A stretch of DNA of 64,000 nt from assembly GCA_004764695.1 (NCBI GenBank), contig SMSO01000036.1, forward strand, positions 2,046,001 through 2,110,000, written 5' to 3'. Below the pieces are notes generated by a model. It was not told where the DNA came from. It ran no database searches and saw only the letters and a list, made by a program, of their open reading frames with translations. A program made the position numbers and the translations under genes. Source of the DNA: Schizochytrium sp. TIO01. Lineage: Eukaryota; Protista; Bigyra: Labyrinthulomycetes. Shown piece by piece: positions 29,448 to 39,580 of the stretch (position 1 is the first letter of the stretch; each line of letters starts with the position of its first letter).

Positions 29448-32018
29448 CTACATCGCGGACTCAGACACGGGTTGAAACGCATGAGGCGCCATCTGTGTAA
29501 GGATAGTGGGATTCACCCGCGTTGCATTTCGTAAGCGACGTTGTAAACGCGGTACCACAATCCAAGGGGGGGGGATTCCACAATGACGCGCAAACAGACT
29601 TGAAGGGTGAACCTCTAACATTACATTGCCATGAATAGTAACGTAGTGCTGCCCATCCTTGTCAAGACGGGCAATATTAAGAAACAAGCTTTTACATATG
29701 CATTGAATAAGACTTTCCACATCCTCGCAACATGAGAGAATTTGTAAACCCAACTCTCTAGCTTGCCTTCCCAGAATTCTGGCAAGATCTGCACGTATTG
29801 TATTACAACGCTTTAATGTAGCTAGACGCAAACCAAACTGATTGCAAAAAGTCTTCCTGCCGATGCCTTGAGACTCGCTAGCATCCCGAAATGCATTAAA
29901 TATGTTCACATACATGATCAAATCTCCTTCCTTTGCGCCCAGAGCACGCATGCACTCATCAGATTTGGCTTGCTGTCGCACATCCCCAAAATGAGTTGTA
30001 GCAGACTCAAACAAACTTGCATATTCAAGAGCCTCTAACATCGCAGCAATCGACAGCACCTCCTCCGCGCACCCCAGGTCAAGGGAGCATACCAACATTC
30101 GCCCAAGCATGGGGCTCAACGGAAGGAATTCTGCAATTCGCACACCCAGAGCTGTCAATTCTCCTTCATCATCCATTGCTTCCAGAGCATGTAGGCAATC
30201 TAAAGCTCGCATCATTGCTTTAGCTGGTGGAGGCGTCATGTAGGAATATCGCACAACATTACGCACTTGCAACCTCTTCAGTTGCAAACACACTGCAGAC
30301 AAGTCGCTTCGTAGTATCTCAGCTTCAGCCTCCGTACTAAGTTCTTCCCGAGCGTCTGCCTCGGTGCAAAGACGAAGAACTAACTCGTTAGAAAACACAG
30401 CGCGCTGTCGAGCCTCATCCCAACTCACTGGCACAATACCCCTGTCTTCCACTCCTGTTTCGCTGTCAACGACTGTCCTCTCAGTGAACATGGAGTCAAT
30501 TACGGCAAAGACACCGTGCAAAGCAGCTGAAAATTTTGAACTTGACTCCATAACTGAGGATGCTACAACGCAGTGACGAAGACCATGTTCTGCGGGGCCA
30601 ACTCTTAGCTGGGATGCACCACCTTGAGTCCAAGGAATAAGATTAAGCGTTGAGCACCCTTGCCTTCTTTTCAATAAGTCTACAAAATTCGATACGGCAC
30701 GATTGGTTGGCAGAAAAACAAGAATGTTTCCTGCGCTGACAGGGCGCTCGATATGCAACATTGCAACGAGATCTACGCTCTCCTGCAAGTAGTTTGAGGT
30801 GGGATTTTCAAGATACATAATTCGGCGTTTCCTGTTATCCCACGTATCCCTTGGTTGGCGTAGATCAAGAAGGCCGCATTGTGGGGTTGCAAGCAAAAAT
30901 CGATCTCGCACAAGCTCTGCTGATGCTTCTGAGCTAGAAAAGACAACTACCCTTAAATCTTGTCGCTGGCATATTATTTTAACCAAAAGACTCATCAAGA
31001 TATCCGTATAGACACTACGCTCCTCAAACTTGTTCACGACAATCATTGCAAATCGAGATAGCAAAGGGTCGCGAAAAGTCTCTTGCAAAAGCATGCAGTC
31101 GTTGTACACAGTGATTAAGTTGTTTTCTCCATTACCATGTAAGCGCTGCCGGTCAAAGCGCTCTACATAGTCCCCACATCTATAGTCGAATGCAAAATTA
31201 CGAGCATTGTTTCCCCCTGGAACCGTACAGGCAATTCGGGCTGAAGTTGAGGACGCAGCGTCGCTTAGAAATGCTCCGCACATTGAACCCCCACGTTCCT
31301 CAAGACATACTACCAATTGAAGCGAGGTAGAAAATTTCAGGATATCTGCTTTCTGAACCTGCTTAGACTTGCGACGCATGACTTGACTATTCGTGGAATC
31401 CATTGGATCTCGCAAGGATGTGCATGGCGCATCCTCATTGTGTTCTTTTTTTGGGGCGTTGGTCGCATGAGGCTCGCGAGAACTATGACGAGATTTGTGC
31501 CTTGATCCACGTTCTTCACGCGAATGCTTTCGATGCGATTTTCTAGACCGTGAATTACGAGAGTGTTTATATTTATGTGCCTTGTCACGAGAAGCCTCGC
31601 TCAGAGACTTTTGTGAGCCTTTTTTTTTTCTTGACTTTGAGGATGATGAGGATACAGAGGATGAAGACGATGAAGACGATGATGAGGTTTCAGATGAACT
31701 TGAAGACGAAGAGCTTGACACAGATGACCTTGATGACGCCCTCTTGTGTCGTCGCCTTCTTACTTCTCGTCGTCCCCGCCGCTGATCTTTTCTCCTCCTC
31801 GAGTGTCCAGAGCTTGGTTTTCGAAGCGGATTTGCCGCCGGTGTTGCATCAGCTTCTGTCTTTGCAGATATTTTACTTTCACACTTTTGAAACTCACTGT
31901 CATCTCTATCTCTGCGGTGTCTCTTGCGACTTGTTTTCTTGCTTTTGGCAGCCTTCACAGTGGTACTTCTTGAGAGTACAAGTCCTTGGTTCTCGTCATC
32001 GTCCTCTGGAAGCTCCAT
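29448..32018 (-). CDS. DEAH/RHA-family RNA helicase-like protein (closest by motif to DHX35) with degenerate ATPase motifs and an N-terminal R/S/K-rich extension
   Basis: DPLLSRF..IVV....ERSVYTDIL, NILVFLP, AEILRSDLSAVCLQLK, YMTPPP, ELTALG..IAEFLPLSPMLGRML, GCAEEVLSIAAML, EGDL, VHPSS: the RecA1-RecA2-HA2-OB layout of DEAH helicases. Confidence 0.88.
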   Translation of the reverse strand: MELPEDDDENQGLVLSRSTTVKAAKSKKTSRKRHRRDRDDSEFQKCESKISAKTEADATPAANPLRKPSSGHSRRRKDQRRGRREVRRRRHKRASSRSSVSSSSSSSSSETSSSSSSSSSSVSSSSSKSRKKKGSQKSLSEASRDKAHKYKHSRNSRSRKSHRKHSREERGSRHKSRHSSREPHATNAPKKEHNEDAPCTSLRDPMDSTNSQVMRRKSKQVQKADILKFSTSLQLVVCLEERGGSMCGAFLSDAASSTSARIACTVPGGNNARNFAFDYRCGDYVERFDRQRLHGNGENNLITVYNDCMLLQETFRDPLLSRFAMIVVNKFEERSVYTDILMSLLVKIICQRQDLRVVVFSSSEASAELVRDRFLLATPQCGLLDLRQPRDTWDNRKRRIMYLENPTSNYLQESVDLVAMLHIERPVSAGNILVFLPTNRAVSNFVDLLKRRQGCSTLNLIPWTQGGASQLRVGPAEHGLRHCVVASSVMESSSKFSAALHGVFAVIDSMFTERTVVDSETGVEDRGIVPVSWDEARQRAVFSNELVLRLCTEADAREELSTEAEAEILRSDLSAVCLQLKRLQVRNVVRYSYMTPPPAKAMMRALDCLHALEAMDDEGELTALGVRIAEFLPLSPMLGRMLVCSLDLGCAEEVLSIAAMLEALEYASLFESATTHFGDVRQQAKSDECMRALGAKEGDLIMYVNIFNAFRDASESQGIGRKTFCNQFGLRLATLKRCNTIRADLARILGRQARELGLQILSCCEDVESLIQCICKSLFLNIARLDKDGQHYVTIHGNVMLEVHPSSLFARHCGIPPPWIVVPRLQRRLRNATRVNPTILTQMAPHAFQPVSESAM

Positions 32019-32399
32019 GGCGTCGATTAAAAGGTGTAACCAATATAGAAACTCCCTCCACAGAGAAATTTCTCAACCTTTTTTAAGCTAGTCCCTCCAG
32101 CTCTACGACACGATCAGTTCCTTCTTCAGCTTCGTGCCAATGTAGCGAATCAGCTCTCGCCAGAGGGCTGTGGAGTGAGTGTATCGAAGATCATCACAAT
32201 CACCTTTACCCGTCCTAACCCCTACTTCTACTCATACTTAGCTTCTTATACTTTCAGGTCTATACTCTACTTTCACACTCTACTTATACTTATACCTCAC
32301 TTATAATCGACTTATAAACAGTAAGTACGTAAGTGCTTATCTATTGGTTCACTGGTATTTGTTGTTGAGAACGTGAGGCCCTCGAGCAGCAAGGCGGCA

Positions 32400-34646
32400 A
32401 TGGGCGGGGCCAACTCCACGCTGCAAACCGGAAAGGCGTGTTTGACACTGCCCAAGAAATCGCTGGGGTACAGGATACCTGCGAGACATTTCTCAAGCCG
32501 CCAGTCAGAGTTCGAAATTCAGCAGAACTGCCGCTTGAGTGCTTGCAAAGCCAACATGGAGCACCAACCAAGCCAGGCTGAAGGAATGAATGGTGAGCAC
32601 CAGGATAAAGTGGAGCGCACGGATAGCGGAGCACAGGTCGATGCAGAGGGCAACGCAAAACCTGGCGAAGCACAGGTGTCAGAGAGCCCTGCTACAAAGG
32701 ATGCAAATATTTTGGAGACCTCCCAGAAAGATGCTGCCGAAGAGGCCCGCAGAAAGAATTACGAGCAAGTTAGAGCCCTCGTGGAGGAGAAGCATAAGGA
32801 TATTTTAGCAGAGTACTCTTCAAAGGAATCAAAGAATGCCTTAAAACGCAAGATGGCCTCGCTTGTACGTCAAGAGCTTGTGCGGCAATCAAAGGCAAGA
32901 CAGAAGATGAAACGTGCCAAGTTGGCCGAGACTGAAGGCAAGAAATCGGGTCGGCCAGAAAGACCAGAGGCAGAGGAACGCAAAGCCATGGATCAAGCGG
33001 CTATGTCACAGCTGAGGAAGGCTGCAAAGGTTTCTGTACCAAATCTGATGCAGACAAACCCTAAGATTGTAGTGGACATGGAGTTCGCTCAATTAATGCC
33101 CCGGGATTTGCGAAGAGGGTTGTACCACCAGATTTCGAGCACATACGGCAATAACCGTGGAGCCTGGAGACCGAGTCTACTGATGCTTGTGGGAATGACG
33201 CCCGAGCTCCAGGCTGACTTTTTAGAACGTCAATCTACAGCAGATTCGTGGAAAGAAATTGGCGACTTTTCCATGCACAGCGAACCCTTCGAAGAGCTGT
33301 TTACCCCTGAAAATGCAGTGTATCTTTCTGCAGACGCCACAGAAACCCTTGAAGAGTTTGATCCTAGCAAAGCCTATATTATTGGTGGACTCATTGATAG
33401 GAATAGCAAAAAGGGTGCGTCACAAGATAAGGCCCGTACGCTCAAGTTTCCCAGCGCCAAGCTTCCTATGGATGAGTACTTCACGCGCCAAAATAAAACT
33501 GAGGGTAAAAAGGTTCTCACTGTAAATCAAGTCTGTGATATCATACGTGACCACCGTGGCTCTGGTAGCTGGGATTATGCACTTGATCGTCAAGTTCCAC
33601 ACCGTTTCAATGCTGCCACAAAAGAAAAGCTCCGCGCGGCTAATATTGATGTGGAGTCAGCTCATGACAAAACTAGCAACTGGCGCTATGTTGATGAGAA
33701 GCCGCGTACAGCACTTGTCACTGGTGCCTCCTCCGGCATTGGCCTTGCGTGGGCCAAAGAGCTCCGTCAGCGGGGGTGGTCCGTCATTATGGTTTCACGT
33801 GACGCTCGTCGTCTTGATGCTGCAGCTACAGAGGTCCGGAAGGTTACACCCGAGGGCAGTTCCCGGCCTGAAGCCACCTTGGAACCCTTGGTCTTTACTA
33901 CAGAAGCTGATTGCACTAACTGGGCCGATGTGGCACGGCTGACCCTGGCTGTGAAGACCCGGGTTGAGGGTTTGGATGGAATTGTTCTTGCAGCCGGTAC
34001 TTTCAAGTGGGATGACGACCAGTTACTTCAGTCTGACCATTCACTCCTTATTCGCCAGAACCTGTCCAGCAAATCACTTATTGCTAAGGGTCTCCTGCAG
34101 GTCGTTCACTCAGACCTGCGCTACCGTGAGAATGAACCTGCCCCAGCAGTAGAACCAGAGGTCGACAGCAGCAATGAGAGTGGAAATAAACCTGCCCCTC
34201 AACCCTTCTTTCTTCAGGATCCCACCGGGTTTATGCTTGTTCGCGAAGAGAAAAAACAGGAGCAATCTTCCAGTACAGAAATGCATAAAGCTAAGCCTCA
34301 GAACGAAAAGGATGATGGTTTCCAGAGGTTTGTCATGGTTGTTGGCTCTGATGCAGGCACCCCAGACTTTTCTCAGCGCGTTCCAGATACTGAACAGGAG
34401 CAGGGATATATCACGTCTATGCAGGCTGTCCGCACATGGTCTACCCAACTTGCCACTTTAGTGAAGGATGTTACAGACAGTGTCACTATTCAACTGGATG
34501 AAGCTCCTCTTCTCGACTCCCCATTAGCCCGTAGTGAGTTTTCGCGCCTCAAGATTGATTGGGGGACTATTCCCAACACCCAAGATTATGTGCACGCAAA
34601 GGCGGAAGCCCTCTTTACGAATCTTCAACAAAAGCCGTGCAAGTAG
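32400..34646 (+). CDS. TRM10: Trm10-family tRNA m1G9/m1A9 SPOUT methyltransferase fused to a C-terminal SDR (Rossmann-fold) domain; alternative start at ATG 32556
   Basis: Trm10 motifs IVVDMEFAQLM, QISSTYGNNR, VYLSADA, AYIIGGLIDRN, SAKLPM, KVLTVNQV, W..AL...VP.R (~33060-33606). SDR motifs TALVTGASSGIG, SVIMVSR, ADCT, LDGIVLAAG, QNL, VVGS, GYITSM (~33700-34600). Uninterrupted ORF. Confidence 0.9.
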   Translation: MGGANSTLQTGKACLTLPKKSLGYRIPARHFSSRQSEFEIQQNCRLSACKANMEHQPSQAEGMNGEHQDKVERTDSGAQVDAEGNAKPGEAQVSESPATKDANILETSQKDAAEEARRKNYEQVRALVEEKHKDILAEYSSKESKNALKRKMASLVRQELVRQSKARQKMKRAKLAETEGKKSGRPERPEAEERKAMDQAAMSQLRKAAKVSVPNLMQTNPKIVVDMEFAQLMPRDLRRGLYHQISSTYGNNRGAWRPSLLMLVGMTPELQADFLERQSTADSWKEIGDFSMHSEPFEELFTPENAVYLSADATETLEEFDPSKAYIIGGLIDRNSKKGASQDKARTLKFPSAKLPMDEYFTRQNKTEGKKVLTVNQVCDIIRDHRGSGSWDYALDRQVPHRFNAATKEKLRAANIDVESAHDKTSNWRYVDEKPRTALVTGASSGIGLAWAKELRQRGWSVIMVSRDARRLDAAATEVRKVTPEGSSRPEATLEPLVFTTEADCTNWADVARLTLAVKTRVEGLDGIVLAAGTFKWDDDQLLQSDHSLLIRQNLSSKSLIAKGLLQVVHSDLRYRENEPAPAVEPEVDSSNESGNKPAPQPFFLQDPTGFMLVREEKKQEQSSSTEMHKAKPQNEKDDGFQRFVMVVGSDAGTPDFSQRVPDTEQEQGYITSMQAVRTWSTQLATLVKDVTDSVTIQLDEAPLLDSPLARSEFSRLKIDWGTIPNTQDYVHAKAEALFTNLQQKPCK

Positions 34647-35184
34647 TGCACACTCTGATTGCCCATTTACTTATATATGATTTGACTTCTTTTCCTCCAG
34701 TAGAAATGTATTTGCAGTATGCCAATTTCCCCTAGCTATAGGCCACAAGATGCACTCGTGAACTTTGTCAAATAATACTCTCTTTCTTGATGTAATGTTC
34801 TTTTGAACGAGGAAGAACCTCTAAATTTCAAACGCCACCCCTACATGAAAAATTTAATCAGTTTATTAATCTAAGAAAGCCAGTAGAATGAACTTCTAGA
34901 TCCAGTAGAAAATGATTTTGCACTACAGTGAAACTTATTCAGTTTAGGTCACATGCACTCTACAAACTTTGCATTGCAACTAAGGAAGTCGTGATTTCGC
35001 TTTCATGTTCAACCTCTGATATTGTTCCTGTCAGCAAAGACAATAATAAAAGGTACCAAACGGGCTGTAACCATGATTTTACCTAACTCTCAGGCAAAAC
35101 GAAGAACCCGTTTTCTTCAACTCAACAAGAAGGCCCAAGACTGTGATGCAAGGAAAAGGAAAAAAAAAGCAAATAATATCATCA

Positions 35185-37503
35185 TCATGCTTGAGGGTAC
35201 TGAGATAAGTCCACAACAAATCGCGCTCCCTTCATAAAAGGATACGCCCCAGCCCACTCTGGCAAAGTAGAGGTGCCAACTTCGGCCACACCATGATGAA
35301 TGGGATGTGTCAGCGTGCCACGAAAAACTAGTGCGTCTCCACTTTTCATCACTATCCGCGCTCCATTGATTGTCACTACAGCGTCCTCTCCTATGCTAAT
35401 AAGGGTTTTGCACGCGTCGCTTAACACAGGGCGTGGCTCCTCTGCGCATCCATGCACGAAACATTGTAACTGTGCTTCCCGGAACCCGCCCGGTGTCGCA
35501 CATTCCTGAAGCATACGTACACCTGCCTGCCTATCAGCAGTGGTAAATCTTGGATCATTTTCAATGGTAGAACATGCCTTTGTTGAAGCCGCATCAAAGT
35601 GCGAGGCCCATGAATCAGCATGCAATGGCATGGAAAAGGATGGGAAGCTCATCCGCAAACCATCCCCAATTTGCAACAACGGCGCCATGCGGCAAAGGTG
35701 GGTCGAAGCGTACACTGCGTCAAACAGAGCCTTGCCACCATCACTGCAGTAGTTGCGGATGAATATCACAGGGATATGACCATGACGAATAGGTTGCATC
35801 TGGTCAACTGTATTTTGATTCAATGGTAACCCACGCGCAAGGTGAACTCGAATGTGCTCTCGTAGGTCTTCGCATTGCATCATGTACCGATCTTCTATCA
35901 TCTGCGGTGTGATGCATAGCTGAACGACTTCTGAGTTTGTTGAAGCCATTTGAGCCTCACACTGGACGGGTTCTTGGACAATAAGGACTGTTCCATTGTG
36001 AGCACCAGCAGCCACGAGAGAACGAGAGCCATCTGCGCTCCGACGAAGATGCGCCGGCTGGAAAGCCGCCATGGCCAATACAAAGCGCCTCCGTGAAACG
36101 TTAGGACCAAACTTTGCCATCACTGCCGCAAAAAGTTCCTGAACTGTTGCTGTCGTTGGCAGTGTAACAACAATGGACTTCTTTCTTTTCTCAATGAACA
36201 CGCGCATAGTAAAAGTATTCGACGATTGAAGAGGGGCGCTGCGGCCCGTTTGTGTGCGGGTATCTACGCATTCCTCAATCCAATTGACGGTTCTAAGTGC
36301 GATATCTACAGAGCTAGTTCCGTCACGCAGACGAGTTGGTTTGCCGTCGAACTCGATATCGTGAATGTTCTTCATTGACGGCCGCCAACCAGTTGCCATG
36401 AGAAGACGCAACACTGTGCCAAAGTGCGTCTCGAAACAGCTGTTTTGAAGGTTTTCAACCCGAATAGCCAGGGGTGCCCCGCTTTGTGCGCGCTCCAAAA
36501 GGCCGCGAAGAGAGGTCATCATGGTCTTGATCCCCAACATCCAGCGGACGTCCACACGGTCAAGGAGCGTAGCCAATTGGTTCGCGGCCTCTTGCAAGAC
36601 CTCATCAATGGACTCAAAAGAAGAGCTGCTGGTGTGACTCTGCGATAGCATTACAGGTGGCTGGCCCATGACCATAAGGTCTTGATTGTCGCCGCTGTGA
36701 TTCCGAGAGAGAATAACCGGGTCGCCCCTGCGTCGCTTTGCCTCAGCTTCTCCAGCCTCCTCGCGAGACGATTGTGTCTGGGCCCTGCATACCGTCCTTG
36801 GCTCCACCTTATCATGAAACTGGCCTGAATTACTACTCGCTGCCGTACAAGGGGCCATCGGCGGTGATGTTTCATGTGAAGCAGTCTGCATTGAAGTGCT
36901 TTGAGAACTCGCATTTCCCACATCTTCGTTTCCAATCTCAGTTTCAACTGAATTACGTGTAAGGTTTTCGTCTGCAACTGCATTAGTATATGTGTTCGAA
37001 GCTATGTTCGCGTTTGTATTGGCGTTCGTGGCAATGTGGTCTGCATTAGATCGCGCTCTACGTTCGCCATTACGTCCATAAGTGGCATCCTGGCCGATCC
37101 TACTACTACGCATTGCTTTCACGACCTCCTCCTGATGCGAAGCTGCTCCTGGATGTTTAGCAACTCCCTGTTCTGCAGTGTTTGGACTTCCAAGGTTGTT
37201 TGAAGAAGGTTCATTTGGCACCAAGCTTGGCGCTGGAGTCGGATCTACACTCAAATGTGATGAAGATGTCGAAGGCGCTGCACGCTTAGCGCCAGCTCGG
37301 ACGCCCGTGTCTGTGTTGATGTTGATGTCGAGGTCCAGATCAAGGTCTGCCCCACGAGGTTGCTCTTGGGTGACTTGATCACCGGAGTTCGTGAAGTCTG
37401 GGGGGGTAGCAGCGCTGGCGTTGGCATCGGCGTTGGTGCTCCTAGCCTTCTGCGCTCTCGCCATCTCCGCGCCCATGGCAGGATTTTGCGAAGCGTCGGC
37501 CAT
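35185..37503 (-). CDS. Multidomain protein: disordered N-terminus, PUB-like domain, ubiquitin/UBX-like domain, C-terminal AlkB-like 2OG-Fe(II) oxygenase domain
   Basis: First ATG at 37503 (the ORF track starts at GTG 37575). IRVENLQNSCF...LRLLMATGW is PUB-like. FTMRVF...VTLPTTATVQELF...SLVAAGAHNGTVLIVQE is beta-grasp-like. LHAD...LISIG...MKSGDALVF...HHGV...RFVV gives the HxD..H..R pattern. Confidence 0.7.
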   Translation of the reverse strand: MADASQNPAMGAEMARAQKARSTNADANASAATPPDFTNSGDQVTQEQPRGADLDLDLDININTDTGVRAGAKRAAPSTSSSHLSVDPTPAPSLVPNEPSSNNLGSPNTAEQGVAKHPGAASHQEEVVKAMRSSRIGQDATYGRNGERRARSNADHIATNANTNANIASNTYTNAVADENLTRNSVETEIGNEDVGNASSQSTSMQTASHETSPPMAPCTAASSNSGQFHDKVEPRTVCRAQTQSSREEAGEAEAKRRRGDPVILSRNHSGDNQDLMVMGQPPVMLSQSHTSSSSFESIDEVLQEAANQLATLLDRVDVRWMLGIKTMMTSLRGLLERAQSGAPLAIRVENLQNSCFETHFGTVLRLLMATGWRPSMKNIHDIEFDGKPTRLRDGTSSVDIALRTVNWIEECVDTRTQTGRSAPLQSSNTFTMRVFIEKRKKSIVVTLPTTATVQELFAAVMAKFGPNVSRRRFVLAMAAFQPAHLRRSADGSRSLVAAGAHNGTVLIVQEPVQCEAQMASTNSEVVQLCITPQMIEDRYMMQCEDLREHIRVHLARGLPLNQNTVDQMQPIRHGHIPVIFIRNYCSDGGKALFDAVYASTHLCRMAPLLQIGDGLRMSFPSFSMPLHADSWASHFDAASTKACSTIENDPRFTTADRQAGVRMLQECATPGGFREAQLQCFVHGCAEEPRPVLSDACKTLISIGEDAVVTINGARIVMKSGDALVFRGTLTHPIHHGVAEVGTSTLPEWAGAYPFMKGARFVVDLSQYPQA

Positions 37504-39580
37504 ACCCGCGCGGATCACCGGAGATGCGGCGGAAGGTGCAAGCGGGAGCGAGGGAACGAAGCTCTTGTGCCCCACTCGCTACCGAGATCCGCGTTTGCGG
37601 TGATTGTGTTCTGCGAGACCATACTCGACAATAATGATAATCTTGATCTTTTCGTGATCATTTTTTTGTTACTGTTCTTGTTGTTCTCCTCATAATTGAG
37701 CAAGTAAATGTGGACTTCTTAAGAATCCCTCACTCATCAACAGACTGAGGTTTCAAAGAATCAAGTGAGAGATAGCCTTACTTTGGTTTCTGCAAATGAG
37801 TGAATGGAATGGTTGGGGGGTGTCTTGTTTTCTAACCTTGTGATAAAATAACTGTATCTTACTTTTTACAATCTTGTGCTGGTAGAAAAGGTTTAGTCGA
37901 TCTGGATGCTCATGAGAAGAAGATTGAGAACCTCACAGAAATCGAAGCTCGCAGTCTCGGAGTTGAGGAATCCTATGGATCTACGGGTAAAACACACCTG
38001 CTGGATAAGAGAAGAGCGGCTACGAATTACATGAATTTTAACGCAGTCTAATTTAACCACCTTTAGGGTGGATCGCTTTCCCCAATCTGAAATGCCAGGT
38101 TTGCTTTTCGAAAATCATACCATACTAGAGAAGAACTATATTCAGTGAAATAGAGCATGGTAAACCAGCGAGCCAATTCATGAATCTTCACTTGGAATTT
38201 CACTTTGTGCTTTGGGCATACCCAGAACGAGCCTAGAGGCTTGAAAATTGATGAGGCACAAAGCTCGGTTTCCATAGAAGGTTCAGCATCCATGCCTCGC
38301 AGCCCAAAAGTCCCGAACCAGAATACAAACAACTATTTTTGAAAGGGTACGGATTTGAAGTAGGCCAACTTGGACTAAATTTAATGAGATGAAAGCTCGT
38401 ACCACGTTTCATTCTTCAAGGGACTAGTATGATGGGCTACCCCTTTTCTTTGTTAAAAGTATCATGCCATGCTGTAAGAAATTACGGCTTTGGCAGATTT
38501 ACAACAATGTGCAAATAAGAATGCTCCGGTCTTCAAGATTTTTTCTGAAAACTTAAACGATGTAGTACATAGAGGTCTCTACGACGGCCAGGCTCTCTGG
38601 GCCTGATAAGCCTCCTGCTTTTCACTTGCGCTGGGTTCTTTGTAAAAACAGAGAGCTCTACTCCTATTGGCTAAGCTAGGTAGACTTGGGCACGTCAGAA
38701 ATCGCAGTGATGCTTATGCAGCCTTTCGAAGGGGCAATCAAAGGACTTGACAAAGAGGCCCGAGAAGAAGAAGAAGAAGAAGACGCAAAGCAGTGGATAA
38801 GAAAATGCTTGCAAAGAATTCGCGTTTCTAAAATCTCGCATAGGTATGACCTTGCTTTTCTTTTACTGCTTGTCATGGCCATTTTCCATATGCAGGAGTT
38901 CAGCCAGCATGTCAGGATCATTTTCTCTTTTGCCGCGACGCATCACATTGGAATAACTACATGCAACATGAATGAAATTGCCGCATTTCCCCATACGAAA
39001 AAGTTGAGGGAAAGAGAACCAGAACAGAGAGTACGAAATATTACTTTGGCCTCTAAAATCCACTCATATTTTCCTTGCTTGAAGAGATATTGGACCTCCC
39101 CTGCTGTTGCGAATGCTTCAACTTGTGTCCACTGGAGCATCAAGTACTAAAAGTCCCGAGCGACCGCGGACCTCTCCCTGAGCAGTCCTCGCACACACCT
39201 TGCGTACAATAGCGAGTGCTAACAGTCCTAGTAGAGACTGGAAAACACTTCGACTCGGAGAAGGAAGCAAAAGGCGATGAAATGATCAATTCTTGGACGC
39301 GTCCCAGAGTTCTCGAGCCCGCTTCAGCAAACCGATACTGCAAGTCTCCTGGGCCCTCGCCGGTTCGAGGAGGTTGGTCAACAGACTTGGGTTGAACTGT
39401 TGGTTGCATCGCAAAGTAGCTCGGCCTTTCCTTCGTACAGCTTGGCTTCCCGAGGTGATAGGCCAAGAAAGGAAATAGCCGCAGAAAGCTATTGGTATAG
39501 GCCTATATCGTGACACGTTGAAAGGAGAAGCTTGCTTTTGCAGAAGCATAAGATTGAGGATTCAAGGTGTACCAAGAACA

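What the first reader, a model, noticed from the sequence alone, without database searches (positions are those of the whole stretch)
32400..34646. Single-chain Trm10-SDR fusion that mirrors the animal mitochondrial TRMT10C-SDR5C1 complex
Seen: one uninterrupted ORF carries a complete Trm10 SPOUT domain (~33060-33606) and, about 30 codons later, an SDR Rossmann fold starting TALVTGASSGIG (~33700). Established: in animal mitochondria TRMT10C (MRPP1) needs the SDR protein SDR5C1/HSD17B10 (MRPP2) as a scaffold for tRNA position-9 methylation, and the pair supports PRORP (RNase P) processing; yeast Trm10 and TRMT10A work alone. Inference: a protist encoding both folds in one chain is a Rosetta-stone case, either convergent recruitment of an SDR as a tRNA-processing platform or a deeper origin of the partnership. 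I do not know of a described fusion of this kind.
Basis: partly seen in the sequence, partly recalled or inferred. Interest (0 to 1): 0.9.

Follow-up and report, generated by a model that had tools for sequence, protein, structure and literature searches.

The report
Trm10 tRNA methyltransferase fused to SDR-like domain
In a thraustochytrid protist, the only Trm10 tRNA methyltransferase gene is fused in one chain to a diverged dehydrogenase-like (SDR) domain; this looks like an independent echo of the two-protein TRMT10C-SDR5C1 enzyme of animal mitochondria and could help explain why that enzyme needs a dehydrogenase partner.

Summary
Window 32400-34646 (+) is one uninterrupted 748-codon ORF with a Trm10 SPOUT domain (aa 219-402) and a complete classical SDR fold (aa 433-745).

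- **Transcript:** gene-sized, transcript-like contigs from four studies span both domains with no joint.
- **Copy number:** it is the only Trm10 gene found in the 64-Mb genome.
- **Conservation:** the fusion occurs in Hondaea fermentalgiana (55% identity) and about 10 more protist or metagenome protein clusters. A single origin is not rejected (p-AU 0.76).
- **SDR part:** all 12 full-length members keep the TGxxxGxG motif, an NADP-type Arg, and Asn-Ser-Tyr, but the catalytic Lys is always Met. Nine relatives keep only a degenerate Rossmann stump.
- **Relation to the animal system:** the SDR part is not HSD17B10-like, and the Trm10 part is closer to Trm10/TRMT10A than to TRMT10C. This favours convergence, not shared ancestry.
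- **Docking:** a controlled model supports the SDR part docking on the helix before the SPOUT domain (ipSAE 0.79, best control 0.00).

My best reading (about 50%) is a general m1G9 enzyme with a built-in, non-dehydrogenase SDR partner. Mitochondrial targeting is unproven. I found no paper describing the fusion. Sibling notes of this scan on this same stretch (s1-850318, s1-850337) raised the Lys-to-Met change and the upstream ATG; the scan has no note of it on other DNA.

The parts
32400..34646 (+). Whole coding sequence of the Trm10-SDR fusion, 748 codons plus the stop. An in-frame GTG lies at 32373 and a second ATG (Met53) at 32556.
   Evidence: ORF list. The first ATG downstream of 32185 is at 32400. 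Transcript-like contigs cover it without joints.
32400..32555 (+). N-terminal extension, aa 1-52. It is basic (8 K/R, 2 D/E, pI 9.9) and resembles a targeting presequence. It is absent from the Hondaea orthologue, and whether it is translated is uncertain.
   Evidence: Two of the four transcript-like contigs begin at 32403 and 32409; the other two begin at 32366 and 32185.
32556..32711 (+). Acidic region, aa 53-104 (4 K/R, 11 D/E). It aligns to no relative, was left out of both structure models, and is presumed disordered.
   Evidence: Alignment A1 and composition.
32712..33053 (+). Basic helical N-terminal region, aa 105-218. The stretch aa 105-215 has 29 K/R and pI 10. It ends in the helix that precedes the SPOUT domain (aa ~190-217), which sits where the TRMT10C 'adapter helix' sits.
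   Evidence: AF2 model: helices with pLDDT mostly above 90. The model superposes on TRMT10C chain 8cbk_F, residues 105..379, over model residues 19..298 (Z 20.5, 265 aligned, rmsd 4.5). Composition.
33054..33605 (+). Trm10 SPOUT methyltransferase domain, aa 219-402. The family's invariant residues are intact: Gln244, Asn252, Pro258, the YLSAD motif, the IGG-x-x-Asp333 motif, LTVNQV and Trp391.
   Evidence: Pfam PF01746. PDB sequence matches with printed alignments. Structural Z 21.6 to TRMT10A 4fmw (rmsd 1.6, 172 aligned) and 20.8 to spTrm10. Invariant columns in A1 and A3.
33606..33695 (+). Linker, aa 403-432. Its length varies among relatives and its predicted confidence is low to middling (pLDDT under 50 only at aa 422-428).
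33696..34634 (+). SDR-like domain, aa 433-745: a full classical SDR fold with strands beta1 to beta7.
   Evidence: AF2 on this part alone gives pLDDT 81 and pTM 0.82. Foldseek gives E 1.5e-13 to NADPH carbonyl reductase 5b1y. VIA Z is about 20 to many SDRs. hhalign against five canonical SDRs of the same genome gives probability 99.45%, E 4.5e-22, 228 aligned columns.
33720..33743 (+). Dinucleotide-binding motif TGASSGIG (aa 441-448). Gly442, Gly446 and Gly448 are conserved in the full-length family (Gly448 in 11 of 12). Arg467 (33798-33800), after beta2, is invariant and is typical of NADP(H) preference.
33990..34016 (+). AAGTFKWDD (aa 531-539). It replaces the canonical NNAG motif. Gly533, Phe535, Trp537 and Asp538 are invariant in the 12 full-length members.
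34122..34319 (+). Insertion, aa ~575-640, between helix alphaE and strand beta5. It is predicted to be disordered, varies in length, and is absent from canonical SDRs.
34344..34433 (+). Active-site stretch: GS(650)DAG ... Y(670)ITSM(674)QAVR(678). Ser and Tyr are kept, the catalytic Lys is replaced by Met in 12 of 12 members, and Arg678 is present in 11 of 12.
   Evidence: Translation, residue table, and the profile-profile alignment that places Y-x3-M on the Y-x3-K of canonical SDRs.
34647..34695 (+). 3' untranslated end. Transcript-like contigs of three studies all stop at 34695.
   Evidence: table 8.

Best explanation
This is one unspliced gene that encodes the organism's only Trm10-family tRNA methyltransferase. 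Shown: one ORF; one transcript-like contig across both domains; an intact Trm10 catalytic domain with a basic helical N-terminal region; a C-terminal classical SDR fold that keeps the TGxxxGxG motif, an NADP-type Arg and Asn-Ser-Tyr but has Met in place of the catalytic Lys in every full-length family member; and conservation of the fusion in other protists. Inferred: the enzyme methylates N1 of purine 9 (most likely G9) of tRNAs with S-adenosylmethionine, as Trm10/TRMT10A does. Also inferred: the SDR-like domain does not work as an ordinary dehydrogenase. Instead it is a built-in structural partner, possibly still binding NADP(H), that packs by its alpha2/beta3/alpha3 edge against the helix preceding the SPOUT domain and against the SPOUT body, stabilising or positioning the methyltransferase. 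In function this would be a convergent, single-chain analogue of SDR5C1 in the animal TRMT10C-SDR5C1 enzyme, not its homologue. The protein is probably the general (nucleo-cytosolic) m1G9 enzyme; a mitochondrial isoform made from the upstream ATG is possible but unproven.
For: Gene and fusion: the ORF, both Pfam domains above their cut-offs, and contigs from four studies spanning 324xx-34695 with no joint and with intergenic holes. Sole Trm10: one PF01746 match in the genome, and one protein match even at E<=1. Active methyltransferase: conserved Gln244, Asp333 and the other family-invariant residues, aligned to S. pombe Trm10 and TRMT10A, and Z 21.6 to TRMT10A. SDR fold. Lys to Met: Y670-x3-M674 aligns on the Y-x3-K of five canonical SDRs of the same genome (hhalign probability 99.45%, E 4.5e-22) and is invariant in 12 of 12 full-length members. 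Non-catalytic role: nine related Trm10 proteins in the same clade keep a 120-180 aa Rossmann-like stump that has lost the Gly motif, Arg467, FxWD, Ser and Tyr, so the appended domain persists without a cofactor or active site. Docking: AF2 on aa 105-748 gives pLDDT 84.9 and pTM 0.81 for a 644-residue multi-domain chain. The complex test of aa 105-422 against aa 429-748 scored 0.79 with a best control of 0.00. That mark was reached by 51 of 78 solved complexes and 2 of 108 mismatched pairs; on eukaryotes, by 39 of 65 solved pairs with no like complex among older structures and 2 of 126 unrelated pairs. The runs share at least 69% of contacts and the partner's pLDDT is at least 73. The contact on the Trm10 side includes aa 202-220, the helix that is positionally equivalent to the TRMT10C adapter helix 183-202, which anchors SDR5C1 (ranges; PMC8437803). 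Convergence: HSD17B10 is not among the 60 best PDB sequence matches listed, of 62 found at E<=0.01, nor among the rows listed for the two fold searches. The Trm10 part is nearer to Trm10/TRMT10A than to TRMT10C. Single origin within protists: holding both fusion groups together gives a better tree (+19.3 lnL, p-AU 0.756), and the groups share the derived motifs YxxxM and GxFxWD.
Against: In the 12 full-length members, the best-conserved SDR positions are the cofactor and active-site positions (Gly motif, Arg467, Asp504, Asn554, Ser650, Tyr670, and the invariant Met674, Phe535, Trp537, Asp538 and Trp721). This is what a working ligand-binding or catalytic site would show, not a mere scaffold. 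Arg678, two helical turns after Tyr670, might stand in for the lost Lys. The predicted interface residues are not better conserved than the rest of the domain (full set 0.03 against 1.19; degenerate set 0.57 against -0.26, p 0.14). The complex score is only the model's own confidence, two halves of one chain are an untested case for that test, and TRMT10C-SDR5C1 structures exist, so part of the score could be memory. The SDR-like core is not basic (pI 4.7-9.1), so it gives no sign of an RNA-binding platform. No activity, oligomeric state or cellular location has been measured. The runs are only presumed to be RNA.
Confidence: 0.5

Rival explanations
1. It is a truly bifunctional enzyme. The SDR-like domain is an active NADP(H)-dependent oxidoreductase with a modified catalytic set (Asn-Ser-Tyr plus Met/Arg678). 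It acts either on a small metabolite unrelated to tRNA or on a tRNA nucleotide held by the Trm10 part, which would be a second, redox-type modification.
For: The Gly motif, Arg467, Asp504, Asn554, Ser650 and Tyr670 are invariant, and so are the pocket residues Phe535, Trp537, Asp538, Phe657 and Trp721, across 12 proteins that are only 24-56% identical overall. Arg678 is present in 11 of 12. The best structural matches are NADPH-bound reductases.
Against: The Lys of Y-x3-K is Met in all 12. From established SDR enzymology, that Lys holds the nicotinamide ribose and lowers the pKa of the Tyr, and its loss normally abolishes activity. Nine relatives keep the domain after losing every cofactor and catalytic residue. 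To my knowledge no SDR-catalysed tRNA modification is known.
Confidence: 0.22
2. It is a regulatory pseudo-enzyme. The SDR-like domain binds NADP(H) or another nucleotide-like ligand without turnover and couples Trm10 activity or oligomeric state to redox or metabolic state.
For: The dinucleotide site is conserved while the catalytic Lys is lost. The domain is predicted to sit rigidly against the methyltransferase.
Against: There is no direct evidence. The degenerate relatives have lost the binding motif yet keep the domain, so ligand sensing cannot be the role shared by the whole family.
Confidence: 0.12
3. It shares ancestry or function with animal mitochondrial RNase P. On this reading the fusion is a mitochondrial TRMT10C-like enzyme whose SDR part corresponds to SDR5C1, and it serves the organism's PRORP as a processing platform.
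For: The upstream ATG adds a basic, presequence-like 52-residue peptide. The genome has a single PRORP gene. The N-terminal helices plus SPOUT domain superpose on TRMT10C over 265 residues (Z 20.5). The helix before the SPOUT domain is predicted to contact the SDR part, as the adapter helix does in the human complex (PMC8437803).
Against: The Trm10 part is closer to Trm10/TRMT10A than to TRMT10C. The SDR part is not HSD17B10-like. The contact uses a monomer edge, not the groove of a tetramer. It is the only Trm10 in the genome. The Hondaea orthologue lacks the extension. Two transcript-like contigs start just after the upstream ATG. The literature places TRMT10C, mitochondrial m1R9 and the recruitment of SDR5C1 within metazoans (PMC10941002). 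The match to the TRMT10C N-terminal domain may simply reflect that few other Trm10 N-terminal regions have been resolved.
Confidence: 0.08
4. It is an artefact: two adjacent genes read as one, or an assembly chimera.
For: None was found. The only gap is that the runs are not labelled as RNA and no protein-level data exist.
Against: There is no stop in 748 codons. The same contiguous sequence occurs in 23 runs from 8 studies. One contig per run crosses the junction with no joint. The same architecture occurs in Hondaea and about 10 further clusters. The junction is predicted to be structured.
Confidence: 0.02

Closest known systems
Human/animal mitochondrial TRMT10C-SDR5C1 (MRPP1-MRPP2) methyltransferase subcomplex of mtRNase P
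   Same: A Trm10-family SPOUT methyltransferase works together with a classical SDR fold. In both cases the helix just before the SPOUT domain is the contact element: solved for the human complex (adapter helix 183-202; PMC8437803) and only predicted here. In the human complex the dehydrogenase chemistry of the SDR is not needed for methylation (PMC10941002); here the catalytic Lys is missing.
   Different: Here there is one polypeptide instead of a 1-2:4 hetero-complex. The SDR part is not HSD17B10-like and has Y-x3-M in place of Y-x3-K. The predicted contact is with the alpha2/beta3/alpha3 edge of one SDR monomer, not a groove built by four subunits. The Trm10 part is nearer to Trm10/TRMT10A than to TRMT10C. 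It is the sole Trm10 of the genome. Mitochondrial location, a link to PRORP and dual m1A/m1G specificity are not shown.
Yeast Trm10 / human TRMT10A (stand-alone, monomeric tRNA m1G9 methyltransferases)
   Same: These are the best sequence and structure matches of the methyltransferase part: 4jwh E 3e-22 and 4fmw E 2e-21; Z 21.6 and 20.8 with 31-32% identity. The conserved active-site Gln and Asp and a basic N-terminal region are shared.
   Different: The stand-alone enzymes have no C-terminal domain. This protein carries a conserved ~310-residue SDR-like domain that is predicted to pack on the SPOUT body.
Classical NADP(H)-dependent SDRs (for example Aeropyrum carbonyl reductase 5b1y, 11beta-HSD1, actinorhodin ketoreductase)
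   Same: The full beta1-beta7 Rossmann fold, the TGxxxGxG motif, an Arg after beta2, the Asp at the end of beta3, the Asn in alphaE, the Ser at the end of beta5 and the Tyr in alphaF are all present.
   Different: The catalytic Lys is Met. The NNAG motif is replaced by AGxFxWD. The Ser-Tyr spacing is longer, at 20 residues. There is a disordered insertion of about 65 residues before beta5. Identity to any solved SDR in the Foldseek and VIA alignments is only 13-26%. No paralogue in the same genome reaches E<=1e-3.

Membership tests
Trm10 family (SPOUT tRNA purine-9 N1-methyltransferases; Pfam PF01746) | The domain profile matches above the curated cut-off. | tested here: met
   62.5 bits against a cut-off of 27.3, E 5.6e-17, aa 241-402.
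Trm10 family (SPOUT tRNA purine-9 N1-methyltransferases; Pfam PF01746) | The SPOUT fold of Trm10 type. | tested here: met
   VIA Z 21.6 (rmsd 1.6, 172 aligned) to TRMT10A 4fmw, and Z 20.8 to spTrm10 4jwh. Model pLDDT is mostly above 90.
Trm10 family (SPOUT tRNA purine-9 N1-methyltransferases; Pfam PF01746) | The conserved active-site Gln and Asp (Q118 of S. pombe Trm10 per PMC3874184; TRMT10C Q226/D314 per PMC8437803) and the SAM-pocket motifs. | tested here: met
   Gln244 and Asp333 (IGGLID) align to the equivalent residues in the printed alignments and are invariant in alignments A1 and A3.
Trm10 family (SPOUT tRNA purine-9 N1-methyltransferases; Pfam PF01746) | m1G9 or m1A9 methyltransferase activity on tRNA. 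| not testable with these tools
   This needs an enzyme assay or tRNA mass spectrometry.
TRMT10C (mitochondrial Trm10 paralogue, mtRNase P subunit) | Closer to TRMT10C than to the other Trm10 paralogues. | tested here: not met
   TRMT10C chains score E 1.6e-14 against 3e-22 and 2e-21 for Trm10 and TRMT10A. Identity is 22-27% against 31-32%.
TRMT10C (mitochondrial Trm10 paralogue, mtRNase P subunit) | Mitochondrial targeting. | tested here: inconclusive
   aa 1-52 are basic, but they are absent in Hondaea, and two of the four transcript-like contigs start at 32403 and 32409, just after the ATG. No targeting predictor was available.
TRMT10C (mitochondrial Trm10 paralogue, mtRNase P subunit) | Works with PRORP as an RNase P subunit. 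| not testable with these tools
   The only finding is that one PRORP gene exists in the genome.
Classical short-chain dehydrogenases/reductases (Pfam PF00106) | Profile match and Rossmann-type SDR fold. | tested here: met
   PF00106 scores 47.7 bits against a cut-off of 26.6, though only over profile positions 2-99. hhalign over the full domain gives probability 99.45%. Foldseek gives E 1.5e-13.
Classical short-chain dehydrogenases/reductases (Pfam PF00106) | The TGxxxGxG dinucleotide-binding motif. | tested here: met
   TGASSGIG at 33720-33743. All three Gly are kept in 11 of the 12 full-length members; P0020 has Asp at 448.
Classical short-chain dehydrogenases/reductases (Pfam PF00106) | The catalytic tetrad Asn-Ser-Tyr-Lys (Y-x3-K). 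| tested here: not met
   Asn554, Ser650 and Tyr670 are present, but the Lys position is Met674 in 12 of 12.
SDR5C1 / HSD17B10 | Specific sequence or structural likeness to HSD17B10 within the SDR superfamily. | tested here: not met
   HSD17B10 is not among the 60 best PDB sequence matches listed, of 62 found at E<=0.01. It is also not among the rows listed for Foldseek or the 50 entries listed for VIA. All SDR matches are nearly tied, so this shows no special affinity rather than proven exclusion.
SDR5C1 / HSD17B10 | A homotetramer that offers a four-subunit groove to the Trm10 adapter helix. | not tested
The predicted contact leaves the alphaE/alphaF face free, so oligomerisation remains possible.

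The most novel reading that the evidence does not exclude
The conserved Asn-Ser-Tyr-Met pocket, with its invariant Phe535, Trp537, Asp538 and Trp721, is a working site aimed at the tRNA held by the Trm10 part. Either it performs a so far unknown NADP(H)-dependent tRNA modification, or it is a cofactor-gated reader that sets which tRNAs receive m1G9. On this reading the repeated pairing of Trm10 with an SDR fold, in animals and in these protists, reflects a functional fit between the two folds rather than chance.
Probability: 0.12. Interest if true: 0.9.

Novelty: new variant of a known kind. Interest (0 to 1): 0.68.

Why it matters
Why human TRMT10C needs a dehydrogenase (SDR5C1/HSD17B10) has been an open question since 2012. 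Reviews call the SDR's role 'elusive' and suggest a neutral, accidental recruitment confined to animals (PMC10941002).

A second, independent and covalent Trm10-SDR partnership offers a natural comparison:
- The SDR comes from a different SDR lineage.
- It has lost the catalytic Lys.
- It has decayed to a stump in some relatives.
- It is attached to the only Trm10 of the cell.

If the fused domain proves necessary for folding, tRNA binding or substrate range, Trm10-SDR pairing would be a recurrent solution rather than an animal oddity. The single-chain protein would also be a simple model, with no tetramer and no second gene, for working out what an SDR fold contributes to a monomeric SPOUT enzyme. 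It also flags a conserved Y-x3-M subfamily of SDR-like domains whose ligand is unknown.

Tried and rejected
**Taxonomy of the other fusion proteins.**
- Two cluster look-ups gave sources only (MMETSP, EukProt, JGI, ENA, Logan, NCBI) and no organism names.
- The word-indexed homologue search returned only Hondaea for the window protein, missed the known relatives when queried with the alignment, and gave no organism for P0006.
- The ESM Atlas holds no fusion cluster of 50 or more members and returned only generic SDR clusters.

**Conservation test of the predicted interface.** The interface residues are not more conserved than the rest of the domain, so I claim no support from conservation.

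**Charge test for an RNA-binding SDR surface.** The core is neutral to acidic, so this gives no support.

**PDB searches by sequence.**
- The N-terminal helical part alone (aa 105-220) found nothing meaningful. The sequence match to TRMT10C therefore does not extend independently into its N-terminal domain.
- The C-terminal 116 residues alone gave no PDB match.
- A four-sequence profile, and hhalign against one canonical SDR, aligned only the N-terminal half. The 11-sequence profile against five canonical SDRs then aligned the whole domain.

**Tree tests.** The AU test on the full 151-row tree did not finish in three runs. It was replaced by a 55-row set in which every fourth unfused Trm10 was kept and P0093, P0162 and near-identical cluster members were left out.

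**Readings rejected.**
- Two genes or a chimera.
- HSD17B10 orthology.
- A second Trm10 paralogue in the genome.

**Not tested.**
- Targeting prediction (no tool).


Full report
**1.
- The ORF list shows one open frame at 32373(GTG)/32400(first ATG)..34646 on the + strand, 748 codons from the ATG, with no stop.
- Pfam finds tRNA_m1G_MT (PF01746) at aa 241-402 (E 5.6e-17, 62.5 bits against a cut-off of 27.3) and adh_short (PF00106) at aa 437-545 (E 1.7e-12, 47.7 bits against 26.6; profile positions 2-99 only). NCBIfam returns only generic SDR models, all far below their cut-offs.
TGASSGIG is at 33720-33743.

**2. It is one gene, apparently unspliced.**
- The stretch is held nearly intact by 23 public runs from 8 studies.
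- I laid four runs from four studies, with contig sets of 24-37 Mb against a 64-Mb genome, on 31400-35700. Each gave a single contig over the gene: 32185-34695, 32366-34664, 32403-34695 and 32409-34695. There were no joints.
- Three of the four had no contig at all in the downstream intergenic stretch 34712-35143, and contigs broke at the gene boundaries of both neighbours.
- This is the pattern of transcript assemblies, although the records do not say RNA, so I treat transcription as very likely but not proven. Three studies share the end at 34695, 49 bases after the stop.
- The 5' ends leave the start codon open. The first ATG downstream of 32185 is at 32400, in a good context. Two contigs, however, begin 3-9 bases after it, which would make Met53 (32556) the first ATG of those molecules.

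**3. Organism and copy number.**
- The nearest named relative is the Hondaea fermentalgiana protein annotated 'tRNA guanine9-N1-methyltransferase' (632 aa, 55% identity, the same two domains). The window therefore comes from a thraustochytrid (Labyrinthulomycetes, stramenopiles).
- The window's own 64-Mb, 37-contig assembly has exactly one PF01746 match, this gene. A protein search with the SPOUT domain at E<=1 finds only itself.
- The genome has one PRORP gene, at least 18 canonical SDR genes, and no paralogue of the fused SDR part at E<=1e-3.

**4. The methyltransferase part.**
- By sequence the best solved relatives are S. pombe Trm10 (E 3.1e-22), human TRMT10A (2e-21) and S. cerevisiae Trm10. 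TRMT10C chains follow at 1.6e-14.
- The printed alignments and the invariant columns of alignments A1 and A3 show the family's Gln (Gln244), the IGG-x-x-Asp motif (Asp333), YLSAD and LTVNQV all intact.
- The AF2 model of aa 105-748 (33-row alignment) has pLDDT 84.9 and pTM 0.81.
- Its SPOUT domain superposes on TRMT10A with Z 21.6 (rmsd 1.6, 172 residues, 31% identity). Together with the preceding helices it superposes on TRMT10C chain 8cbk_F, residues 105..379, over model residues 19..298 (Z 20.5, 265 residues, rmsd 4.5).
- The region aa 105-215 is strongly basic (29 K/R, pI 10), like the tRNA-binding N-terminal regions of other Trm10 enzymes. On its own it has no sequence match in the PDB.

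**5. The SDR-like part.**
- Modelled alone (aa 425-748), it is a complete classical SDR fold (pLDDT 81, pTM 0.82) with a disordered insertion at about aa 575-640.
- Foldseek's best matches are NADPH-dependent reductases (5b1y at E 1.5e-13, 11beta-HSD1, actinorhodin ketoreductase) at 13-18% identity. The wide VIA search gives many SDRs tied at Z 19-20.
- HSD17B10 does not appear among the 60 best PDB sequence matches listed (of 62 found at E<=0.01) or among the rows listed for the fold searches.
- A profile of 11 fused SDR domains aligns over the whole domain with a profile of five canonical SDRs of the same genome (hhalign probability 99.45%, E 4.5e-22, 228 columns). That alignment puts Ser650 on the catalytic Ser, Tyr670 on the catalytic Tyr and Met674 on the catalytic Lys. 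AAGT falls on NNAG and PPLxDT on PGxxxT.

**6. The family.**
- The exhaustive HMMER search found the same architecture in further 50%-identity clusters: P0003-P0006 (E 1e-91 to 1e-82) and P0008-P0012, plus P0020.
- In these 12 full-length proteins (24-56% identical to the window protein) the following are conserved:
  - invariant: Gly442, Gly446, Arg467, Asp504, Gly533, Phe535, Trp537, Asp538, Asn554, Ser650, Tyr670, Met674 and Trp721;
  - present in 11 of 12: Gly448 and Arg678.
- Nine further Trm10 proteins (P0013, 14, 15, 24, 26, 36, 45, 61, 116) carry a 120-180 residue tail. It is recognisably homologous to the N-terminal half of this domain (beta1 to beta4, and the 'R-L-K' of alpha3), but it has lost the Gly motif, Arg467, FxWD, Ser and Tyr.
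- On a tree of Trm10 domains the fused and stump-bearing proteins fall in two groups: A with 17 rows (support 97) and B with 7 rows (support 93), on a weak backbone.
- In a reduced 55-row set, holding A and B together gives a better likelihood (+19.3) and p-AU 0.756. One ancient fusion is therefore compatible with the data, and the shared derived motifs argue for it.
The sources are MMETSP, EukProt, JGI, ENA and Logan, which points to poorly sampled protists.

**7. How the two parts relate.**
- A pTM of 0.81 for a 644-residue chain suggests a fixed arrangement.
- In the controlled complex test I gave aa 105-422 and aa 429-748 as two chains. The result was ipSAE 0.79 (three runs, 0.79-0.80) against 0.00 for the best of three controls.
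  - The mark was reached by 51 of 78 solved complexes and 2 of 108 mismatched pairs.
  - On eukaryotes it was reached by 39 of 65 solved pairs with no like complex among older structures and by 2 of 126 unrelated pairs.
  - The runs share at least 69% of their contacts, and the partner's pLDDT is at least 73.
- The confident contacts are:
  - on the Trm10 side: aa 202-220 (the helix before the SPOUT domain), 253-258, 322 and 387-393;
  - on the SDR side: alpha2 (aa 469-480), beta3 (495-503) and alpha3 (507-521).
- By the alignment ranges, aa 202-220 sit where TRMT10C has its adapter helix (183-202), which anchors it to SDR5C1 (PMC8437803). That helix inserts into a groove made by four SDR5C1 subunits. 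Here the contact is the edge of one Rossmann sheet, which leaves the usual alphaE/alphaF oligomerisation face free.
- Caveats:
  - The score is the model's own confidence.
  - Halves of one chain are not a calibrated case.
  - Solved TRMT10C-SDR5C1 structures could feed memory.
  - The interface residues are not better conserved than the rest of the domain.

**8. Interpretation.**
- Shown:
  - a real, conserved, single-chain fusion;
  - the sole Trm10 of the genome;
  - an intact methyltransferase site;
  - an SDR fold with its cofactor motif and Asn-Ser-Tyr but with Met for Lys;
  - decay of the domain to a stump without cofactor or catalytic residues in relatives.
- Inferred, best reading (about 0.5): the protein is the cell's general tRNA m1G9 (perhaps m1R9) methyltransferase. 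The SDR-like domain is a built-in, non-dehydrogenase partner that packs on the SPOUT module. In function it is analogous to SDR5C1, whose enzymatic activity is dispensable for methylation (PMC10941002), but it was acquired independently.
- The retention of stumps fits a structural dependence of Trm10 on the appended domain.
- Against a pure scaffold: in the full-length members the most conserved positions are exactly the ligand and active-site positions, and Arg678 could partly replace the Lys. I therefore give real weight to an active or ligand-sensing domain (0.22 and 0.12).
- Homology with the mitochondrial RNase P subcomplex, or membership of it, gets about 0.08. Only the basic N-terminal extension (aa 1-52) and the TRMT10C-like helical arrangement speak for it.

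**9. Novelty.**
- Full-text searches for TRMT10C/SDR5C1/fusion, Trm10/short-chain dehydrogenase/fused, MRPP1/MRPP2/stramenopiles and related terms found no description of such a fusion.
- The 2024 review states that a mitochondrial TRM10 homologue, m1R9 in organellar tRNAs and the recruitment of SDR5C1 are known only in metazoans, and that the distribution of the multi-subunit form has not been studied in detail.
- The Hondaea protein sits in databases under an automatic Trm10 name, so the sequence is not new, but the architecture and its implications appear undescribed.
- I class it as a new variant of a known kind.

**10. Notes on procedure.**
- Earlier notes of this scan on the same stretch (s1-850318 on the Lys-to-Met change; s1-850337 on the upstream ATG) were seen after I had reached the same points independently.

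Noticed in passing
window 32400-32555: The upstream in-frame ATG adds 52 basic residues (8 K/R, 2 D/E) and begins MGGANST, which also fits an N-myristoylation-like pattern. Two of the four transcript-like contigs start at 32403 and 32409, so Met53 (32556) may be the start on many transcripts. Alternative starts giving dual targeting are a possibility. Three of the four runs carry A>T at 32515, which would change Glu39 to Val.
   Followed up: partly
window 29448-32018 (- strand): The divergent neighbour is an 856-aa ORF. It matches only the HA2 winged-helix, HA2 ratchet and OB_NTP_bind domains of DEAH-box helicases in its C-terminal third. There is no Pfam match to the helicase core, and the N-terminus is a long Ser/Arg/Lys-rich low-complexity region. 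It is covered by transcript-like contigs.
   Followed up: partly
window 35185-37575 (- strand): The convergent neighbour is a 796-aa ORF with no Pfam family at E<=0.001. It is covered by transcript-like contigs in all four runs.
   Followed up: no
window 31657-31687: A 31-base GA-rich stretch that codes an acidic repeat also occurs inside unrelated, much deeper contigs (716-875 bases, depth up to 206) in three runs. It is a short low-complexity motif shared with another highly expressed locus.
   Followed up: no
L002 (G000:C31:5112035-5112700, - strand): The genome's only PRORP (PF16953) match, E 2.9e-21, lies in a 799-aa open frame. It is the candidate sole protein-only RNase P for all compartments.
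   Followed up: no
proteins P0013, P0014, P0015, P0024, P0026, P0036, P0045, P0061, P0116: These are Trm10 proteins of unnamed protists with a degenerate 120-180 aa Rossmann-like tail derived from the same SDR-like domain. The Gly motif and catalytic residues are gone, while an R-L-K motif in alpha3 and an E-W motif in the alphaF equivalent are kept. They form a pseudo-SDR 'stump' family.
   Followed up: partly
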